IMG/VR virus record: IMGVR_UViG_3300027668_000008
Span: 186,001-250,000 of that record
Length of the DNA: 64,000 bases
Strand: one strand, 5' to 3'
Made by a program: the position numbers and the translations under genes. Positions 45,516 to 59,126 of this stretch are shown here, piece after piece (positions within the stretch are counted from its first letter, which is position 1; each line of letters opens with the position of its first letter). The notes beneath the pieces were generated by a model. It saw only the letters and a program-made list of their open reading frames with translations, did not search any database and was not told where the DNA came from.

Positions 45516-45968
45516 TTAAGCGTCTTCTGTGAAGTCTGTATCGTCAGTACCTGCCGCAGTATCGTCGTCACCTGCTTCTTCAACTTGAACTTTTCCGTCC
45601 GATGCTGAAACAGTAGTATTCCAACCTATAGATGTGCCGTGCAATGCGTTAGATCCAGTAGCACTTGGTTGTGCTAGTGTCATTTTACGTCCTGCAATTT
45701 TAGATACACCATAAGTTTCACCATCATCGCCTTTTACAGAAATAATCATATCTGTTCCAGTTAATGCCGCTGGTAAAATACCAGTTTTTAGTGTACGAAT
45801 GTATGCAGTGCCAGGTGTTCCAGTTGCTTTAACTGAAAACTTTTTACTACCTAGTTGCTTTGCGATATATCCTTCAACAACGGCTGAACCGTCATGAAAG
45901 TTTACTTTAATTTCTTTGCCGCCTGCTGTAGGCACTCCGAAAAATCTTTTGTTAATTGGTCTTCCCAT
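45516..45968 (-). CDS. Hypothetical protein, likely an abundant virion or head decoration protein
   Basis: Monocistronic unit with late promoter (46042-46049), AGGAG RBS and terminator; MGRPINKRFFG start. Confidence 0.6.
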   Translation of the reverse strand: MGRPINKRFFGVPTAGGKEIKVNFHDGSAVVEGYIAKQLGSKKFSVKATGTPGTAYIRTLKTGILPAALTGTDMIISVKGDDGETYGVSKIAGRKMTLAQPSATGSNALHGTSIGWNTTVSASDGKVQVEEAGDDDTAAGTDDTDFTEDA

Positions 45969-46244: not shown

Positions 46245-46269
46245 AATCACCCTCCTTATTAAAGTTAGG

Positions 46270-46315
46270 TGCGTTCCTTCGCTATTGCTACTTCCGGCCT
46301 CAAAGGCTGAACGTT
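46270..46315 (-). ncRNA. glnA-type glutamine riboswitch
   Basis: AACGTTCA-GCCT-TTG-AGGC-CGGAAGTA-GCAATAGC-GAAGGAACGCA matches the glnA motif: P1 CGTTC/GAACG with E-loop GGAAGTA...GAAG. Confidence 0.85.
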
Positions 46316-46431: not shown

Positions 46432-47679
46432 TTAACTAAATGTTGGGTTAGCAATAGTTACTCTACCAACGTAATCCGCCGCGTTTCCAAGTGAACTTGC
46501 AGTTTGTGAAAGTTCGCTGTAACCGTAACGTGTCATAAAGCCAACTAATGGCTCTAATGTTGCTGGATCAAGTACTACACCTGAACTCATTAGTGGAACG
46601 TAAGGACAATAAAATGCCGCCGCGTCCGCTTCTGATGAACCTTTGTAACCAACTAATACCGCTTCTGAATCAGCCGCATAACTGTCAACATAGATTCTCA
46701 TTGCTGAGTTCAATGTACCAACGAATTTAGTATTTGTTGGTGCTTCAAAAGTACCTTCAGTTGTTCTTGCGAACGCTGAAGTAGATGCACTTTGTAGCAT
46801 AGTTAATGCAGTTGGAGAAACAACAGCCCAGTTACCTGCGCCACGTCTTGTTCTCTGTGCGATTTTGTTAGATACTCTGTTGATCGCCACAGCCAAAGCC
46901 GCGTGTTCGTCACCAACGTAAGTTGCTGTACCACTAACTGCCGCTTGGTCATATGCTTCAGTGTTTGCACCGAAAGCCGTTGAACCAGCCGCCGCTAAAG
47001 TTCTTAAAGAACTTAGAACTTCTTGGTCGATCTCTGCAGTAATCTCTTGGGCTAATGCCGCCATGATTTCTGCTTCTACATCAATACCTTGTTGTGATTG
47101 AGCGTCTTGAGCCGCTTCAAAAGTCCAACGAGCTGATAGTCTTCTAGTACGAGCTTCTACAGTTTGACGTAGAATTTCGATTGAAAGAGTATTACCTGGA
47201 ACACCTTCTAAGTATCCAGCCGCTGTTGTACCAGCCGCTTTTGCACCTGCCGCCGATTCAGTACCTGAATAACCAGCCGCGATGTCTTTTGGCCCTAGAG
47301 CCTCATCGTTAGCGGCTAGGTTAGTACCGTCATTAGTAGTTGCTTGAATTGCCGCACCGTTGGCACTATTAATAGTGTTTGCAGAGTTATATTTAACTCT
47401 TAAAGTGTGGATTTGTGCAATTGGACCAGTCATAGGTTGTACACCAACGATTTCATTTGCAATCACTGTTGGCATTACACGTCTAATTACGGGTAAAATT
47501 ACTTTGTTTAATTGTGCTACACCACCTGCCGCTGTCGCGCCACTAGTTGCCGCCTCTGAAAGGTGGCGTTTAGTATTTTCAAGTATTGTAGACATTGTCT
47601 TGCGACGAGTACCTTGTAAACCATCTAAAAGGGCTTCTTTAGTATTGTCCCAACGACCTTCTGCTAAAATATCAGACAT
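46432..47679 (-). CDS. gp23: Major capsid protein
   Basis: IVGVQPMTGP, RRLSARWTFEAAQD, EIDQE, FYCPYVPL and TRYG motifs. Confidence 0.98.
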   Translation of the reverse strand: MSDILAEGRWDNTKEALLDGLQGTRRKTMSTILENTKRHLSEAATSGATAAGGVAQLNKVILPVIRRVMPTVIANEIVGVQPMTGPIAQIHTLRVKYNSANTINSANGAAIQATTNDGTNLAANDEALGPKDIAAGYSGTESAAGAKAAGTTAAGYLEGVPGNTLSIEILRQTVEARTRRLSARWTFEAAQDAQSQQGIDVEAEIMAALAQEITAEIDQEVLSSLRTLAAAGSTAFGANTEAYDQAAVSGTATYVGDEHAALAVAINRVSNKIAQRTRRGAGNWAVVSPTALTMLQSASTSAFARTTEGTFEAPTNTKFVGTLNSAMRIYVDSYAADSEAVLVGYKGSSEADAAAFYCPYVPLMSSGVVLDPATLEPLVGFMTRYGYSELSQTASSLGNAADYVGRVTIANPTFS

Positions 47680-52906: not shown

Positions 52907-55327
52907 TTAAGATTGAAGTTTTACTATGTGTCCAGTTTGCCTGTTCATTTTCTTTAATTCTACAAGTAATTCAGCATTATCTGAACCTGTGCCTTGTATT
53001 TGTATAAGTTTTTCAACACTTTTAGTAAGGTTTACTATAGGTCCCATGTCCATATCCACTGGTATATTTCTGCCATTCGGTAACGGAACAACTGCTTCAT
53101 TAGTAGCACCTTCACCGATCATTGAAAGTGTGGGCTGTTTAATAATGCCTCCATCTTCAAAACCAAACTTATTTGCAAACCAACCGCCTATTTTCTTACC
53201 AGCGGAATCTCCGCCTATACTACCTAAAACACCACCAATAATACCACCAATAGCAGTACCAACAATTGGAACAAATGATCCTATCATGGCACCTGCCGCT
53301 ACACCACCTAAAGTACCAGCAAAGTTACCAGCCGCTGAGCCAACACCTTCCATTGCTTTACCTGTAGTGGTCTCTTGCTCACTAGTTGCCGCTGTAATAC
53401 CACCAGATGCTAACGCACCCAATATTGGTATCTTTTTAAGAATTCCGCTTGCCACTTTAGTAATAATACTTCCACTACCTGCCGCAACTGCTTTAGTACC
53501 CGAACCTGCAAGACTTGCCGTTGTTTTTACTGCTTCTGTTGTTGCTTTAGCACCTGCGCCTACCACAGTAGCAGTTGTTTTCGATGCCGCAACGGCAGTT
53601 TTTGTTGCAGTGTCTATTGCTGTTTTAGTGGCTTTAGTTGTTGCAACAAGTGAATTTGCCACAGTCTTAGATGCAGTTGCAAATTCGTCTGCGTGTTTAA
53701 CTGCCATTTGACCTAAAGTTTTAGATGCATTGTTTGCCGCTTTTGCGAACCCACTTGCCGCACCGCCTGCCAATACAACATTGTCTTTAAAGTCGGTTAA
53801 GGCTTGTTTCTCTTCTGGTTTCATTTCAACACCGTCAACTAAATCTTTTAATTTGCCAACGATTGTTCCCATGCTTCCAATAGCCGCTTCAGCAACTTTG
53901 TTCATTCCAAGTCTTGTTGTTTTACCTAAGTCCTCGACTAACATTTGTGTATCTTTTACAGTTTTAGTTTCTGGTTCAGGTTCAGGTACTAATGACTTAC
54001 TGTAAGCATCCATGTCACCTTTAAATTTTTCACTAATAACTTTGTACTGTTGGTTAACGCCTTGTAGTGCTAGTACACTTTTGTTCATTTGGTCTGCTAT
54101 TGGACTAAATCCTTGTAAGTCACGCATTCCTTTGAACTGGCTATTTTGTGCATCATAAACTGCACCCATTCTCTTAACAACATCCTCTGACTTAATAGTA
54201 CCTTTACGCATTGAAAGACCAAGTTTGTTAAGCTCTTCTCCCATCGGACTTTGTAATAGTAAGTTACCTTCTGCTGTTGCACCTACTGTTAGTCCTTGCA
54301 TACCACGAAGAACAAGATCCATTGCTCCTGGTACATCGCCGAATTTATCTCTTAATAGCTCTAATGAATTTCTAGTATTTGTGTTTCCTGTAACAGACAT
54401 TTCAGATAACATTAATTCAATGTTAGCCTCTTGTTTGTTTCTTGCCATTTTTTCTGCAAGAGCTTTTCTGTCTTGTCCAGTTAGTGTAGCAAGTTTTGTA
54501 ATTTCTTCTGAATAGTTTGCCGCCGCCATTGCTTGTTGTCTAGTAGACATATTTGCAAATGCAGTATTACGTTGTTGCATCGTAATATATTCGCCGAGCA
54601 TTTCAGCACTTTCTTCAGCACTGATACCTAAGTATCTTAATTTGTCACGTGATAGTTCATTCATTGCGACATTAATGTCTACAAATCGTTTAGCACCCAA
54701 TCTAGCAGTACCACCAAAGACAGCCAAACTTGCTGAGTTTTCTCTAACGATTCCTGTAAAAGTTTCTAATCTTAAATAACTTGCCGCCGCGGCTTTCTCA
54801 ATATCAAATAAGTTGCCGGAAAATGCCGCACCACTTCTGGATAGTTGGTCAAATGAATCTGATAAGTTGGCTGTATGAGCAATAACGGCTCCGCCTGCGG
54901 CACCTAATGCGCCTCCGGCATATGGTATTGCACTTGCTAATTTGTCAACGGCAGTACCCATGTCTCTCATGTTTAGTCCAACGCCGGCTGTACTTGCACC
55001 AAATTTAACAACGTCTTCAACTGCTCCCATGACTTTATCAGCCATGCCTCCTAGTTTTGAACCAAAACTACCAGCACTTTTTCCCGCATCGTCTAATTCT
55101 TCTGCTAAATCGTCAGCACTTTTAGTAAGACCTTTAAGCTCTACATTGAGCTTTTTGCTACTTTTCGCTTGTTCGTTGGTATTCTTAAGAGCATCTTTAA
55201 AACTCTTGGCTCCAGTAGAACCAGAAGATGATGCTTCCATTTTATCAACAAGTCTCTTTAATGTTTCTTCAGTAGCAACATTATTAAGTGTGACTGTATT
55301 ATTGTCTATGTCTATTTCAACTGCCAT
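52907..55327 (-). CDS. Tape measure protein (gp29-like)
   Basis: 806-aa Ala/Gly-rich helical protein; C-terminal DGGII...IGEGATNEAVVPL. Confidence 0.75.
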   Translation of the reverse strand: MAVEIDIDNNTVTLNNVATEETLKRLVDKMEASSSGSTGAKSFKDALKNTNEQAKSSKKLNVELKGLTKSADDLAEELDDAGKSAGSFGSKLGGMADKVMGAVEDVVKFGASTAGVGLNMRDMGTAVDKLASAIPYAGGALGAAGGAVIAHTANLSDSFDQLSRSGAAFSGNLFDIEKAAAASYLRLETFTGIVRENSASLAVFGGTARLGAKRFVDINVAMNELSRDKLRYLGISAEESAEMLGEYITMQQRNTAFANMSTRQQAMAAANYSEEITKLATLTGQDRKALAEKMARNKQEANIELMLSEMSVTGNTNTRNSLELLRDKFGDVPGAMDLVLRGMQGLTVGATAEGNLLLQSPMGEELNKLGLSMRKGTIKSEDVVKRMGAVYDAQNSQFKGMRDLQGFSPIADQMNKSVLALQGVNQQYKVISEKFKGDMDAYSKSLVPEPEPETKTVKDTQMLVEDLGKTTRLGMNKVAEAAIGSMGTIVGKLKDLVDGVEMKPEEKQALTDFKDNVVLAGGAASGFAKAANNASKTLGQMAVKHADEFATASKTVANSLVATTKATKTAIDTATKTAVAASKTTATVVGAGAKATTEAVKTTASLAGSGTKAVAAGSGSIITKVASGILKKIPILGALASGGITAATSEQETTTGKAMEGVGSAAGNFAGTLGGVAAGAMIGSFVPIVGTAIGGIIGGVLGSIGGDSAGKKIGGWFANKFGFEDGGIIKQPTLSMIGEGATNEAVVPLPNGRNIPVDMDMGPIVNLTKSVEKLIQIQGTGSDNAELLVELKKMNRQTGHIVKLQS

Positions 55328-55401: not shown

Positions 55402-56235
55402 ATGGAAAACAATCAAAACCCTTTGGTAGGGTATTTTCGTAAACCAGAAGTTTACTTGTCACTACCTAGTAAGGGAAAGTACTACAAACATGGTGTTTTA
55501 GACTTGCCACCTAACGGCGAACTTGGGATTTTCCCAATGACTGCTAGGGACGAGTTAGTCCTAAAAACACCAGACGCATTACTTAACGGTGCAAGTACCG
55601 TTGAAGTGATACAAAGTTGTGTGCCTGCTATTAACAATGCTTGGGAAATTCCTAGCATTGATATGGACACATTATTAATCGGTGTGCGTATTGCCACTTA
55701 TGGTGAGCAAATGGACATACAAATCGCTTGTAATAAGTGCCAAACACAAAACGAGTTTGGAATCGACTTAACTGCATTAATGGATCAGACTAAGGACTGG
55801 AAGTTCGAAGAAGATTTGGAAATTGGTGATTTAAAACTTACATTTAAACCACTAACTTACCAAGAACTAAATGCTGAAAGTTTGCGTAACTTTGAAGAAT
55901 CAAAGATTATGAAAATCGTTAACAACGACAGTCTAGATGATGAAAAGAAACGTGAAATGTTTCAAGATGCATTCTTAAGACTTACTGCATTAACAGTTGA
56001 CTTAATTGGTAAAACAATATGTAAAGTTGAAAGTCCAAATGGCGTAACTGAAGACAGAGCTCACATTGCTGAGTTTGTACAAAATGTCGACAGAAAAACA
56101 TTTAGTGCAATACAAGATCATCTAGATGGACAAAAAGATAAGAACTCTTTCAAACAGTTTGAAGGCGAATGCACTAATTGTGAAGCACATTTAAGTACTC
56201 CAATTATGTTCGACAATTCCAATTTTTTCGCCTAA
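55402..56235 (+). CDS. gp26: Baseplate hub protein / tail assembly chaperone (gp26-like)
   Basis: LPSKG, MTARDE, IRIATYGE and two CxxC motifs; ends NFFA; GGAG RBS favours ATG 55402. Confidence 0.8.
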   Translation: MENNQNPLVGYFRKPEVYLSLPSKGKYYKHGVLDLPPNGELGIFPMTARDELVLKTPDALLNGASTVEVIQSCVPAINNAWEIPSIDMDTLLIGVRIATYGEQMDIQIACNKCQTQNEFGIDLTALMDQTKDWKFEEDLEIGDLKLTFKPLTYQELNAESLRNFEESKIMKIVNNDSLDDEKKREMFQDAFLRLTALTVDLIGKTICKVESPNGVTEDRAHIAEFVQNVDRKTFSAIQDHLDGQKDKNSFKQFEGECTNCEAHLSTPIMFDNSNFFA

Positions 56236-56459
56236 GGCTTCTGAGTCTCGCTAACGATGAGATCGGACAGTTAGTTAAAGACTATGACAAGGAAGCCCAA
56301 AATCTTAAAAAAGAATTGGTGAGAATAGTATGGTATATGAGAGGTGGAATACACTTGGATCAAGCCTATAACTTGTCACGGAATGATATGAAGGATATAT
56401 CTGGTGTTATCGAAGAGAATATTAAGACAACTCAGAAAACTGGATTACCTTTAATCTAA
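56223..56459 (+). CDS. gp51-like ORF, probably reached by a -1 frameshift from gp26
   Basis: Open -1 frame FFRLRLLSLANDEIGQ...WYMRGG...GLPLI with no 5' start codon; begins at T TTT TTC. Confidence 0.7.
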   Translation, partial: FFRLRLLSLANDEIGQLVKDYDKEAQNLKKELVRIVWYMRGGIHLDQAYNLSRNDMKDISGVIEENIKTTQKTGLPLI

Positions 56460-56665
56460 TATGTTCATGACTATACATTATAATCACTTACATCCATAAA
56501 CATTTTATAAGATTACTAAAAGATATACTTCGTATATCTAATAACTTCACTATCGTTCGTTATTAATTTTCTTTTAGAGTTTTTAGTAGATAATACTATT
56601 AATTGAATAACTGAATATTAAACAATATACTTTTAATACATATTAAGTATAAGAGCGAAGCGATA
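56460..56665. other. AT-rich non-coding tract with hairpins, candidate replication origin
   Basis: No ORF; AGATATAC-TTC-GTATATCT hairpin at 56521-56539; very low GC. Confidence 0.35.
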
Positions 56666-57060
56666 GTCATCATGTAGATTGTTTCAGTCAGACGGAACCA
56701 CTTACGGTTCCGTCAAATGCCTTCATGTGAGTTCGCCACAGCCCGACTATTGGAAGTAAGTATTTTATCGCAACTCTATGGGTTCTAGTCTTTCCCACAC
56801 TTACACTGATCCTACTTTCGTAGTCTATTTCCTCGTTCCGATTGAAATAGTTTTTAAGAGTTATATGCGTTTGTCATACGTTAGCAATCGTACTATACTA
56901 ACCGGTGAGCCCAATTTGTTTGATGGCTTCCACACTCTGGTGTGTTGATCGGTATGTTGCGTGTGTCCCTTTACGGGTACTTTTTCCACAGTGGATAGTT
57001 AAACTGGCCCACTAACCTTATGTGCTAATTGATTTGCCATAATGATTGCTGATTTTGTGC
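56665..57060 (-). ncRNA. Candidate large structured RNA (~400 nt)
   Basis: ORF-free, higher GC than flanks, many stems including CTAC-GAAA-GTAG and a perfect 9-bp hairpin. Confidence 0.55.
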
Positions 57061-57570
57061 CTATGCACACAGAGTCTTAACTCTGTCTGCGTTTCTTTGA
57101 AAGAATTCTTCGAAGCCTGTGATATGCCATGTTTTGTGTTTTGGGGAATTGTATGTGAATTGCCGTGATGTGATGAGTTGATGTGCGCCTGGGGTTGCTA
57201 TAAATTTGCCTTTGTTATTAAACTTCATTATTAAAATATTGAAGTCGCCATCATCTGCCGCGTCCATTAATTGGTCCAGCCAGTCCTCCAGCATACGAAC
57301 CTTGTCGTGTGTGAGCAGTTGATGAAATGGAAAGTCTTTATACGATTTACATTCCGCATTAAATTTTGGAAACGATTGTCCAGGAATAATATCTCCTTTA
57401 AATCCACGTATTTGACCTTCGTGTAATACTTCTTTACGAACAGTATTTTGTCCGCCTACATAAGCGCCTGAGCCCGGAGCTCTAATAAAAGATTCGTTGT
57501 ATAAATCGGATAAGAAACGTGCAACGTCTCTTTCCCAATTACTTCCTTTTGCTTTTTGCTTGTTTGGCAT
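57061..57570 (-). CDS. Holliday junction resolvase-like PD-(D/E)XK nuclease
   Basis: KGSNWER, RAPGSG, GDI and ECK motifs. Confidence 0.75.
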   Translation of the reverse strand: MPNKQKAKGSNWERDVARFLSDLYNESFIRAPGSGAYVGGQNTVRKEVLHEGQIRGFKGDIIPGQSFPKFNAECKSYKDFPFHQLLTHDKVRMLEDWLDQLMDAADDGDFNILIMKFNNKGKFIATPGAHQLITSRQFTYNSPKHKTWHITGFEEFFQRNADRVKTLCA

Positions 57571-57784
57571 TCTTCTTCCTATGTATGTTTAATAGTAACA
57601 CCTTTTGGTGGTACTCGTCAATCTTTTTTTCTGCATAGAAAGGAAATAATGTTGGAACAAAACCGTGTATGATGCTAATGATACCTGTAAGTATCAAATC
57701 CAATCCTGCCACGACGGCAAACTTGGTATGCTCATAATAGGTCTTTCCGGCTTCTTTTAGATGTGCCTTAATTGCCCTTTTCAT
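57539..57784 (-). CDS. Small hydrophobic protein
   Basis: HLKEAGKTYYEH...IIHGFVP.LF pattern (DUF6356-like, from recall). Confidence 0.6.
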   Translation of the reverse strand: MKRAIKAHLKEAGKTYYEHTKFAVVAGLDLILTGIISIIHGFVPTLFPFYAEKKIDEYHQKVLLLNIHRKKNAKQAKSKRK

Positions 57785-59126
57785 AGATTCCCTTTAACTT
57801 ATTGATGTTCGGCTTTCCTAGAACGTTAAGCTCGATGTGTGTAACTAATTTATCCACCGATATACCGTTGTCAGCCAACTTCTGAACTAACTGTTTTACA
57901 TTCACGTCTTTATGTTGCATAACCACTACAACGTGTGTCTGAGATATGCTAAACACACAACAGTATCCTTCTAACCAATTTGGTACAAGTTGTTGTGGAT
58001 TGATTAGTTGGTCGTCAATTCTTATTAAGTCGCTATTGCGTTTTTCAAAATAAAATGTATCTGCGTCAGCACTTACAATATCTTGAGTAACAAATATATC
58101 TATAGATTCATCATTAATGCTTTTGCACATATGACTACTACCTTCGATTGTAAGTATCTCATTTTCGTTAATATCGTAACTGCCTGTGTTGTCGACTATA
58201 CTTCCCATTTCTTTACTATTATACAAGTCTAAGTTGTGCTTGTCAACGACTTTATGTATTAAAGGTGGTAAACATTCAGTAAGTCCATATATTACTGCAA
58301 CTTTTTCTACGCCTTGATTCTTAACCAACCTTCTAATAAACGAATTGTCTATTACACTACCGCCAGTTAAAACCCATTTAACATAATCAAAGTTACGCAA
58401 GTGTATTCCTTGCTTTGCATATGATTGAAAATGCACCGGAAAAATTAACATCATATCCGGTTTGTACTTGTCTAAATCTTCTGCGTTATAAGGATTGTCT
58501 AGTCTAGGTAGTACAATCCGTTTACTTGAAAACAATGCAGGAAAAAAGTAAACACTGCTCACACCTAAGTGAACAATATTATGGAAAAACCAACTTGTGT
58601 TTGCTTCTTTCCAATAAAGTCTTATACTGTCGTCTGTTGCACTCTCTACACTTTTATGAGTGTGTTGTATGCACTTAGGTACTCCAGTACTTCCACTTGT
58701 TAATGCTTCTATTAAAACTTCCGAATGATCGATGATATAAGTTTCAACACCTTCGAACATATCTTCAGTAACACTTATGTCGTCTAAATCTAAGTGAGTA
58801 CAATTATCAGCATGAATAGTACATGGGTGTATACCACGTGTTATCATTGCTTTAATATTTCTACTAGATGTGTATTCATTTGTTATTTCGTGTTCTCCAC
58901 TTATAACAATAATAAGTCCATAATCAATAGCCGCAAAAACACAGGCAAGGTGATGAAAGTCTTCTTGCATTGCAAGTCCAACTCTATCGCCCTTGACTAG
59001 GTTATTGTTCAAGAACAGTTGTTGGTACCCAGAAGCAAATCGAGATAAACTCTCTTTAGTCAACTGGGTACCGTTAATTAGATCAACTATTTCAAAATTA
59101 TTAGATAACTTTGTAATAGATATCAC
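57768..59126 (-). CDS. AMP-binding (ANL family) acyl-CoA-synthetase-like enzyme
   Basis: TSGSTGVPK, LTGG, YGLTE, TQD, R.SDLI and terminal LGKP motifs. Confidence 0.85.
   Translation of the reverse strand: MISITKLSNNFEIVDLINGTQLTKESLSRFASGYQQLFLNNNLVKGDRVGLAMQEDFHHLACVFAAIDYGLIIVISGEHEITNEYTSSRNIKAMITRGIHPCTIHADNCTHLDLDDISVTEDMFEGVETYIIDHSEVLIEALTSGSTGVPKCIQHTHKSVESATDDSIRLYWKEANTSWFFHNIVHLGVSSVYFFPALFSSKRIVLPRLDNPYNAEDLDKYKPDMMLIFPVHFQSYAKQGIHLRNFDYVKWVLTGGSVIDNSFIRRLVKNQGVEKVAVIYGLTECLPPLIHKVVDKHNLDLYNSKEMGSIVDNTGSYDINENEILTIEGSSHMCKSINDESIDIFVTQDIVSADADTFYFEKRNSDLIRIDDQLINPQQLVPNWLEGYCCVFSISQTHVVVVMQHKDVNVKQLVQKLADNGISVDKLVTHIELNVLGKPNINKLKGIYEKGN

What the first reader, a model, noticed from the sequence alone, without database searches (positions are those of the whole stretch)
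56221..56459. Probable programmed -1 frameshift (T TTT TTC) fusing gp26 to a gp51-like ORF
Seen: gp26 ends AAT TTT TTC GCC TAA. The heptamer T TTT TTC (56223-56229) fits X XXY YYZ. The -1 frame stays open for 78 codons with no start codon near its 5' end, and a possible hairpin begins about 11 nt downstream. The gene is adjacent to the tape measure gene. Known: lambda G/GT-type tail chaperones use -1 frameshifts beside tape measure genes, while T4 26 and 51 are annotated as separate genes. Inference: a G/GT-like recoding event in a T4-like phage, supporting gp26/gp51 as tape measure chaperones.
Basis: partly seen in the sequence, partly recalled or inferred. Interest (0 to 1): 0.72.

Follow-up and report, generated by a model that had tools for sequence, protein, structure and literature searches.

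The report
Tail chaperone gene with programmed frameshift
A marine jumbo T4-like phage very probably makes a short and a long version of its gp26-type tail/baseplate-hub chaperone from one gene by a -1 ribosomal slip at T_TTT_TTC; this is a well-supported new example of a trick already described for tail chaperones.

Summary
The gp26-like gene (55402-56235, Pfam PF12322) ends AAT TTT TTC GCC TAA. The -1 frame then runs 76 more codons to 56459.

- **Conservation.** The heptamer alone is not significant: 22 copies in the window against 28.7 expected. But all 92 related IMG/VR loci (39-100% protein identity) and the isolates Atu_ph07, 121Q and PA5oct keep the in-frame T_TTT_TTC. All have a nearby 0-frame stop and a conserved -1 extension of about 70-75 codons.
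- **No independent start.** No start codon is conserved before Met37 of the extension. PA5oct has none at all.
- **One copy.** The 306-kb genome has one PF12322 gene and one extension.
- **Two-gene relatives.** Other lineages carry a short gene followed by an in-frame long gene with a non-slippery junction, like T4 genes 26 and 51.
- **Downstream helix.** A helix starts 3-6 nt after the heptamer and shows compensatory changes in two sister clades. In the window's own clade it is 7 bp and invariant.
- **RNA.** Metatranscriptome contigs cross the site with T6 intact.

Verdict: a -1 programmed frameshift giving products of 277 and 352 aa, confidence about 0.9. The tape-measure chaperone role is inferred. 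The concept was published by Vladimirov et al. (2022), so this is a new member of a known kind.

The parts
55402..56235 (+). Short form (TAC-N): gp26-like 0-frame ORF of 277 aa, with its stop TAA at 56233-56235
   Evidence: Translation. Pfam PF12322 T4_baseplate, E 2.2e-17, residues 45-277 matching profile positions 20-219 of 219. PHROG 150 'baseplate hub'. It is the only PF12322 gene in the 306.7-kb record.
56223..56229 (+). Slippery heptamer T_TTT_TTC, with P-site UUU and A-site UUC, both read by tRNA-Phe
   Evidence: The in-frame heptamer is invariant in 12/12 and 80/80 related loci and in Atu_ph07, 121Q and PA5oct. In L069 a -1-frame TAG lies immediately 5' of it.
56229..56459 (+). -1 frame extension: 76 codons plus stop TAA at 56457-59. 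The long form (TAC-NC) joins 55402-56229 to 56229-56459 and is predicted to be 352 aa with junction ...NSNFF|RLRLL
   Evidence: The peptide FFR[ILMV]RLL...WYMRGG...KTGLP is conserved in all relatives. Pairwise differences at codon positions 1/2/3 are 250/175/415 in the first 29 codons. A profile search gives 360 hits at E<=1e-3, 19 of them full-length in-frame fusions of 319-351 aa. There is a single copy in the genome.
56236..56242 (+). 5' arm (GGCUUCU) of the candidate stimulatory helix, 6 nt after the heptamer
   Evidence: RNAalifold. It lies at the same position as the covarying 5' arms of the sister clades. In the window's own clade the arm is invariant, so there is no covariation there.
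56291..56297 (+). 3' arm (GGAAGCC) of the candidate helix: 7 bp including one G-U, closing a 48-nt loop that holds inner helices
   Evidence: On the window's sequence alone this is not significant (MFE z = -0.8).
52907..55327 (-). Neighbouring 806-aa tape-measure-like gene, transcribed divergently
   Evidence: PHROG tape-measure and tail-lysin families, E 1e-13 to 5e-9 over residues about 520-720; glycine-zipper hit. The syntenic gene in PA5oct is annotated as a virion structural protein found by MS.

Best explanation
A -1 programmed ribosomal frameshift in the single gp26/gp51-family gene of a marine jumbo T4-like phage.

Proposed mechanism: most ribosomes read AAT TTT TTC GCC TAA and release the 277-aa short form. 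A fraction pause with tRNA-Phe on UUU (P site) and UUC (A site). They are probably held by an mRNA helix beginning about 6 nt downstream. Both tRNAs slip back one base onto UUU UUU, and translation continues with CGC CUA AGG... for 76 more codons. This gives a 352-aa long form with the same N-terminal domain plus a helical C-terminal extension.

Shown here, by comparison only: the site, the frame, the coding status of the extension, the lack of an independent start, and the selected downstream helix in relatives.

Inferred: the two products act together as assembly chaperones for the tail tube/tape-measure and baseplate hub. They would be the one-gene equivalent of T4 gp26 (short) plus gp51 (long), analogous to lambda gpG/gpGT. 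The efficiency of the shift is unknown.
For: - **Heptamer conservation.** T_TTT_TTC is kept, wobble positions included, in 12/12 and 80/80 related loci at 39-100% protein identity, while the neighbouring Phe270 codon toggles between TTC and TTT. It is also kept in the isolates Atu_ph07, 121Q and PA5oct.
- **Position of the 0-frame stop.** The stop lies 10, 19 or 25 nt after the heptamer start, so it moves while the heptamer does not.
- **Narrow shift window.** In many loci the -1 frame opens only 16-19 nt before the 0-frame stop, and in L069 only 10 nt before it, at the heptamer itself.
- **Extension is coding.** It is 69-75 codons beyond the 0-frame stop, almost without indels, with codon-position bias before any start. 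The only conserved ATG is Met37 inside the WYMRGG motif, and PA5oct has no ATG/GTG/TTG in the frame at all.
- **Single copy.** The genome has one PF12322 gene and one extension.
- **Natural fusions.** 19 natural long forms of 319-351 aa carry the extension in frame. In L099 and L100 such a long gene has a non-slippery junction (AGT TTC AGA; CTC TTT CGT) and directly follows a second, short PF12322 gene.
- **Same architecture as T4.** PF12322 ends at the C-terminus of T4 gp26 and of the window protein, but at residue 201 of 249 in gp51. The extension resembles the gp51 tail by hhalign at 77% probability, E 2e-5.
- **Downstream helix.** The mean best helix starting 2-8 nt after the heptamer is 9.7 bp, against 6.2-6.4 bp in positional and synonymous-codon controls. 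Compensatory changes are seen in clade D (100% paired, 3 covarying pairs) and clade B including Atu_ph07 (88% paired, 5 covarying pairs).
- **RNA.** Metatranscriptome contigs cross the site into the extension with T6 and no indel.
Against: - No protein-level or reporter evidence exists, so neither the shift nor its efficiency has been measured.
- In the window's own clade the helix is only 7 bp across a 48-nt loop and invariant. It has no covariation, and the region's folding energy is no better than shuffles.
- The helix statistics are not corrected for phylogeny.
- RNA-library contigs drop rare variants and may include carried-over DNA, so low-level transcriptional slippage is not excluded.
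- Some relatives (Atu_ph07, 121Q, L049, L054 and others) have an ATG overlapping the 0-frame stop (ATGA or TAATG). Reinitiation could add a free C-terminal peptide in those phages.
- For the chaperone function there is no sequence or fold link to lambda-type chaperones, and the gene is divergent from the tape-measure-like gene rather than upstream of it.
Confidence: 0.88

Rival explanations
1. Two separate genes: the downstream ORF is translated on its own, from an internal TTG/GTG/ATG, from a non-canonical start, or by termination-reinitiation after the gp26 stop.
For: Gene callers and GenBank records annotate it this way: 121Q gp595, Atu_ph07 gp687 and XaC1_326. Many hits of 40-100 aa in the profile search are such calls. 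Some relatives have an ATG overlapping the 0-frame stop.
Against: The window has no ATG/GTG/TTG before codon 30, and codon 2 is CTA. Residue 2 after the shift varies among I, L, M and V across relatives, so the Met is not conserved. The only conserved ATG is Met37 inside a motif, and PA5oct has no start codon at all. The 29-36 codons before any start show a coding pattern and conserved peptide. In-frame fusions exist in other lineages. This model would not explain the invariant heptamer or the covarying helix.
Confidence: 0.04
2. Transcriptional slippage: RNA polymerase adds one U in the T6 run, giving a U7 mRNA that encodes the same 352-aa protein.
For: The protein product would be identical (NFFRLR). 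A homopolymer run is present. Contig-level RNA data cannot exclude a minor U7 species.
Against: The run is exactly six T, flanked by a non-T base and by C, in all loci. From my own knowledge, bacterial RNA polymerase slippage usually needs runs of 8-9 or more, and selection for slippage would favour longer runs. The strict reading-frame placement (T_TTT_TTC) and a covarying helix 3-6 nt downstream are features of ribosomal -1 frameshifting. RNA-library contigs show T6 with no indel.
Confidence: 0.05
3. Artefact or decay: the true gene is one long ORF and the break is a homopolymer sequencing error, or the gene is a recently broken pseudogene.
For: Homopolymer runs are error-prone. A few database proteins with an FFR junction in one frame (for example P0148) could be such errors.
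Against: The same T6 run followed by a 0-frame stop is found in 92 contigs from many independent metagenomes, in three finished isolate genomes and in RNA contigs. The 0-frame stop always lies within 25 nt of the heptamer.
Confidence: 0.01

Closest known systems
T4 gp26 and gp51 (baseplate hub assembly chaperones; proposed TAC-N and TAC-NC of T4-like phages, Vladimirov, Gautam and Davidson, Virology 2022)
   Same: The N-terminal domain is the same Pfam family, PF12322. The short form ends where the domain ends, as in gp26. The long form adds a C-terminal tail at the same point as gp51, with weak profile similarity (77% probability). Both lie next to the tape-measure gene region. Structural neighbours in BFVD are gp26/gp51 proteins of many myoviruses.
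   Different: T4 uses two genes: the end of gene 26, GAG TTC TTT GAG TTA CTA TAA, is not slippery. This phage has one gene plus a frameshift. Its extension is 76 aa against 48 aa. Pairwise sequence identity to the T4 proteins is undetectable by BLASTP.
Lambda gpG/gpGT and the conserved -1 frameshift of long-tailed phage tail assembly chaperones (Xu, Hendrix and Duda 2004; from my own knowledge)
   Same: A heptamer of X_XXY_YYZ type lies near the 3' end of a small assembly gene beside the tape-measure gene. It gives a major short product and a minor long product that share an N-terminus.
   Different: No sequence family or fold is shared: the only Pfam hit is PF12322, and there is no PDB match. 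The heptamer is T_TTT_TTC rather than G_GGA_AAG. The gene is divergent from the tape-measure-like gene instead of directly upstream of it. Binding partners are untested.
Two-gene relatives in metagenomes (L099: 294-aa short gene followed by 351-aa long gene; L100: 329 aa followed by 336 aa)
   Same: They have the same N-domain and the same extension (E 2e-20 and 1e-19). The downstream PDDEXK_15 gene is the same as in the window.
   Different: The long form is a plain ORF with a non-slippery junction, and the short form is a separate tandem gene. This is the T4-like solution rather than recoding.
Vandenendeviridae/Andersonviridae tail assembly chaperone locus with a conserved GTTTTT motif (PMC12846349)
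   Same: A poly-T -1 slippery site lies at the end of a TAC-N gene, and the downstream piece is routinely mis-annotated as a hypothetical protein.
   Different: It belongs to a different phage family and a different protein family. That case has the chaperone gene directly upstream of the tape-measure gene.

Membership tests
-1 programmed ribosomal frameshift site | Heptamer X_XXY_YYZ in the 0 frame, allowing both tRNAs to re-pair in the -1 frame | tested here: met
   T_TTT_TTC at 56223-56229, with 0-frame codons AAT TTT TTC. Both codons are read by tRNA-Phe (established knowledge).
-1 programmed ribosomal frameshift site | The heptamer is conserved beyond what the amino acids require, across diverged relatives | tested here: met
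   92/92 IMG/VR loci and 3 isolates keep xxT TTT TTC, while the nearby Phe270 codon varies between TTC and TTT.
-1 programmed ribosomal frameshift site | The -1 frame downstream is coding and lacks its own start | tested here: met
   The extension runs 69-75 codons beyond the 0-frame stop in all relatives. Differences at codon position 3 exceed those at 1, which exceed those at 2, before any start. No start codon is conserved, and PA5oct has none.
-1 programmed ribosomal frameshift site | A stimulatory mRNA structure a few nucleotides downstream | tested here: inconclusive
   Met in the sister clades, with compensatory changes and helix length above controls. In the window's own clade there is only an invariant 7-bp stem at 56236-42/56291-97, with no covariation and an unremarkable folding energy.
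-1 programmed ribosomal frameshift site | The trans-frame protein is observed | not testable with these tools
   This needs MS, a reporter assay or ribosome profiling. RNA contigs show only that the mRNA crosses the site unedited.
T4 gp26/gp51 family (Pfam PF12322 T4_baseplate) | Significant match to the family profile above the curated cut-off | tested here: met
   63.9 bits against a cut-off of 24.5, E 2.2e-17, running to the last profile position at the protein's last residue.
T4 gp26/gp51 family (Pfam PF12322 T4_baseplate) | The long form carries a gp51-type C-terminal tail | tested here: inconclusive
   The position is the same. hhalign of profile A11 against A10 gives 77% probability, E 2e-5, over 35 columns. 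Comparisons with single T4 sequences gave nothing. The newer Pfam family PF28602 found on gp51 homologues is not in the local library.
Tail assembly chaperone, lambda G/GT type | Two products with a common N-terminus made by a -1 frameshift | tested here: met
   Inferred from comparative evidence only.
Tail assembly chaperone, lambda G/GT type | Gene lies between the tail tube gene and the tape-measure gene, directly upstream of the latter | tested here: not met
   The gene is adjacent to the tape-measure-like ORF (52907-55327, minus strand) but transcribed divergently from it. The portal gene lies on the other side of that ORF.
Tail assembly chaperone, lambda G/GT type | Sequence or fold homology to known tail assembly chaperones | tested here: not met
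   No Pfam or PHROG chaperone family is hit. The AF2 model of a natural long form (pLDDT 90.8) has no PDB neighbour: best Foldseek E is 0.1, and VIA-align gives only helical-hairpin matches with Z<=8.2.
Tail assembly chaperone, lambda G/GT type | Binds the tape-measure protein (N part) and the tail tube protein (C part), and is absent from virions | not tested
   No complex prediction was run. T4 gp51 is reported to be required for assembly but absent from the particle (PMC3004832).

The most novel reading that the evidence does not exclude
The one-gene frameshifted arrangement may be the ancestral and dominant state across a very large clade of marine and jumbo T4-related myophages, including Atu_ph07, 121Q-type and PA5oct-type phages, where it is not annotated. 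T4's genes 26 and 51 would then be a derived duplication. In addition, the stimulatory helix keeps a fixed 5' arm next to the slip site while its 3' partner has been replaced at least three times, with loops of 16, about 42 or about 48 nt. That would be a natural series for studying how frameshift stimulators evolve inside coding sequence.
Probability: 0.5. Interest if true: 0.5.

Novelty: new member of a known kind. Interest (0 to 1): 0.4.

Why it matters
- **Annotation.** It corrects the annotation of a widespread gene. In public records of related jumbo phages the extension is either a stray 'hypothetical protein' or missing.
- **Support for the T4 proposal.** It gives independent comparative support for the published proposal that T4 gp26 and gp51 are the short and long forms of one tail assembly chaperone.
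- **Testability.** It makes that long-unclear function testable in culturable relatives (PA5oct, 121Q, Atu_ph07) by silent mutation of a single heptamer.
- **Frameshift signals.** The clade-specific covarying helices are a clean natural data set on -1 frameshift stimulators.

Tried and rejected
- blastn of the locus against 50,697 phage records found no match. Relatives were reachable only at protein level.
- BLASTP of the window protein against T4 gp51 and gp26 gave nothing meaningful.
- hhalign of the extension profile against single T4 sequences gave probability below 1%. Only a profile against a profile gave a modest signal.
- Pfam and PHROG searches on the extension alone found no Pfam family and one borderline PHROG hit ('host nuclease inhibitor', E 0.0098), which I treat as noise.
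It was repeated without them.
- PF28602, seen on gp51 homologues, could not be searched because it is not in the local library.
- Fold searches against the PDB found no relative.
- The second heptamer A_AAT_TTT, overlapping on the 5' side, is present in only 55/80 loci and gives poor re-pairing, so I rejected it as the slip site.
- The paper by Vladimirov et al. 2022 is not held, so its content is known here only through citing papers and my own memory.
- No complex prediction was run (chaperone with tape-measure or tube protein): binding is an inference here, not a claim I could sharpen with one low-sensitivity job.

Full report
**What is there.** The window is part of a 306.7-kb IMG/VR virus record (positions 186001-250000). 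The neighbourhood is a T4-type module:
- major head protein, prohead protease and portal;
- an 806-aa tape-measure-like ORF on the minus strand;
- then, on the plus strand, the gene in question;
- then a PDDEXK endonuclease, gp46/47-like nuclease subunits and a gp55-like late sigma factor.

The gene runs from 55402 to 56235. Its ATG has GGAG 7 nt upstream, and the product is 277 aa. It matches Pfam PF12322 (T4_baseplate, the family of T4 gp26 and gp51) at E 2.2e-17, right up to its last residue. It ends AAT TTT TTC GCC TAA, so T_TTT_TTC lies at 56223-56229 in the X_XXY_YYZ frame. The -1 frame is open from 56184 to 56459. After a slip it would read R L R L L S L A N D E I ... for 76 codons.

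**Is it more than chance?** Not on the heptamer alone. TTTTTTC occurs 22 times in the window against 28.7 expected. The evidence is comparative.

*Conservation of the site.* Twelve loci found with the protein, and eighty more found with an alignment of it, span 39-100% protein identity. All carry the in-frame T_TTT_TTC. The 0-frame stop follows 10, 19 or 25 nt after the heptamer start, so the stop moves while the heptamer does not. The preceding codon changes (AAT, AGT, ACT, CAT) but always ends in T. A Phe codon six codons upstream toggles freely between TTC and TTT.

*Isolated phages.* The same arrangement is present in the jumbo phages Agrobacterium Atu_ph07, Escherichia 121Q and Pseudomonas PA5oct. 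Their GenBank records annotate the downstream part as a separate hypothetical protein, or not at all.

*Where the shift must occur.* In many loci the -1 frame opens only 16-19 nt before the 0-frame stop. In L069 a TAG lies immediately 5' of TTT TTT. The change of frame must therefore happen on the heptamer.

**The extension is coding and has no start of its own.** It runs 69-75 codons beyond the 0-frame stop, almost without indels. The conserved peptide is FFR[ILMV]RLL...WYMRGG...KTGLPFF. In the 29 codons before the window's first TTG, pairwise differences at codon positions 1, 2 and 3 are 250, 175 and 415. The only ATG conserved across relatives is Met37 inside the WYMRGG motif. Several relatives have no start before it, and PA5oct has none in the whole frame. 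The genome holds a single PF12322 gene and a single copy of the extension.

**Natural fusions.** A profile of the extension was searched against 1.84 billion representative proteins. It found 360 hits at E<=1e-3. Most are short mis-called ORFs, but 19 of the best 150 are proteins of 319-351 aa with the extension in frame at their C-terminus. I examined two of these at DNA level.
- Their junctions are not slippery (AGT TTC AGA and CTC TTT CGT).
- Each long gene directly follows a second, short PF12322 gene of 294 or 329 aa.

That is the arrangement of T4, where gene 26 (208 aa, PF12322 to its end) and gene 51 (249 aa, PF12322 to residue 201 plus a 48-aa tail) are separate genes. The end of gene 26 is not slippery.

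A profile of the extension aligns with a profile of gp51-type tails at 77% probability, E 2e-5, over 35 columns. The junction motifs also look alike: FKLLVNPDEI in gp51 against FFRLRLLSLANDEI here. This supports 'gp51-like' but does not prove it.

**Downstream RNA.** In 68 non-redundant loci I measured the longest contiguous helix whose 5' arm starts 2-8 nt after the heptamer. It averages 9.7 bp. The same search averages 6.2 bp at other positions in the same genes and 6.4 bp in synonymous-codon randomisations. These statistics are not corrected for phylogeny.

More telling, the 5' arm sits at the same place in all clades, while the 3' arm differs:

| Clade | Loop | Pairs | Cells paired | Pairs with compensatory change |
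|---|---|---|---|---|
| D | 16 nt | 10 | 100% | 3 |
| B (includes Atu_ph07) | 42-52 nt | 16 | 88% | 5 |
| A (the window's own) | 48 nt | 10 modelled, 7 formed in the window | 90% | 1 (one cell only) |

In both covarying clades, controls with the 3' partner slid by 1-3 columns pair far less.

In the window the stem is GGCUUCU (56236-42) with GGAAGCC (56291-97), 6 nt after the heptamer. Across clade A it is essentially invariant, so it is uninformative there. The folding energy of the window sequence alone is unremarkable.

**Expression.** Four marine metatranscriptome runs hold the locus as contigs. Contigs cover 55367 to about 56375. Two of them (56118-56365 and 56021-56253) cross the heptamer with six T and no indel, and one of these continues 136 nt into the extension. 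This fits one mRNA and no dominant edited form. However, contigs hide rare variants, and DNA carry-over cannot be excluded.

**Function.** An AlphaFold2 model of a natural long form (P0014) is confident: pLDDT 90.8, pTM 0.85. The extension forms four helices. The model has no relative in the PDB. Its neighbours among predicted viral structures are gp26/gp51 'baseplate hub' proteins of many myoviruses. T4 gp26 and gp51 are listed as hub assembly chaperones, and gp51 is absent from the particle (PMC3004832).

Vladimirov, Gautam and Davidson (Virology 2022; not held) identified the tail assembly chaperones of T4-like phages. Citing papers describe their findings as follows:
- a short TAC-N form and a long TAC-NC form;
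- two genes in some phages instead of a frameshift;
- poly-T -1 slippery sites in TAC-N genes of T4-like phages.

The chaperone role here is therefore an inference from family membership and analogy. I found no direct link to lambda gpG, and the gene is divergent from the tape-measure-like gene rather than upstream of it.

**Rivals.**
- *Independent initiation* is very unlikely for this phage: there is no start, the pre-start codons are conserved, and fusions exist elsewhere. In relatives with an ATG overlapping the stop, reinitiation could occur in addition to frameshifting.
- *Transcriptional slippage* would give the same protein. It is disfavoured by the strict six-T run, the frame-specific placement and the covarying helix, but it is not excluded at a low level.
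- *Sequencing error or pseudogene* is excluded by the number of independent sources.

**Verdict.** This is a real and strongly conserved -1 programmed frameshift site, with confidence about 0.9. It produces a 277-aa form and a 352-aa form of a gp26/gp51-family assembly chaperone. It is a new, well-documented member of a published kind. It also shows that the site goes unannotated across a large clade of jumbo phages, and it reveals clade-specific covarying stimulatory helices.

Noticed in passing
window 56660-57099 (+): An intergenic block of about 440 nt, between the extension and the PDDEXK gene, is more conserved at DNA level than the flanking genes in relatives L004, L008 and L010. RNAalifold on 4 sequences gives 111 pairs, 24 of them with compensatory changes, and many conserved G-U pairs on the + strand. 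There is no Rfam 15 match at E<=1. A sigma-70-like promoter lies at 56603-56631 and a terminator-like hairpin at 56963-56980. An RNA-library contig starts at 56670. A 39-nt core pattern occurs in only 6 IMG/VR contigs. This is a candidate new structured phage RNA.
   Followed up: partly
window 46268-46315 (-): Glutamine riboswitch aptamer (Rfam RF01739, 52.6 bits against a gathering score of 35). It lies between the major head protein gene (46432-47679, -) and a 150-aa ORF (45516-45968, -) in a marine jumbo phage.
   Followed up: no
L014 (Atu_ph07), L015 (121Q), L016 (PA5oct), L017 (XaC1): Public records of isolated jumbo phages annotate the -1 extension as a separate small hypothetical protein (121Q gp595, Atu_ph07 gp687, XaC1_326) or leave it unannotated (PA5oct). 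None marks ribosomal slippage.
   Followed up: partly
L099 411-1295 and L100 51-1040: In the two-gene relatives, the separate short gene still ends ...AAT TTT TTC ACT GAT AAC AAA TAA (L099) or AAT TTT TTA CCG... (L100). The heptamer is thus kept in one and lost in the other, possibly a vestige of a frameshifting ancestor.
   Followed up: no
window 57768-59126 (-): A 452-aa AMP-binding (adenylate-forming) enzyme gene (Pfam PF00501, E 2.3e-23) sits between the PDDEXK endonuclease and the gp46-like nuclease genes, which is unusual cargo for this module.
   Followed up: no
proteins P0155-P0246 (T4-type gp51 homologues): Precomputed annotation gives gp51 homologues a second, newer Pfam family, PF28602, besides PF12322. 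It presumably covers the gp51-specific C-terminal tail. It is absent from the local Pfam copy, so it could not be tested against the window's extension.
   Followed up: partly
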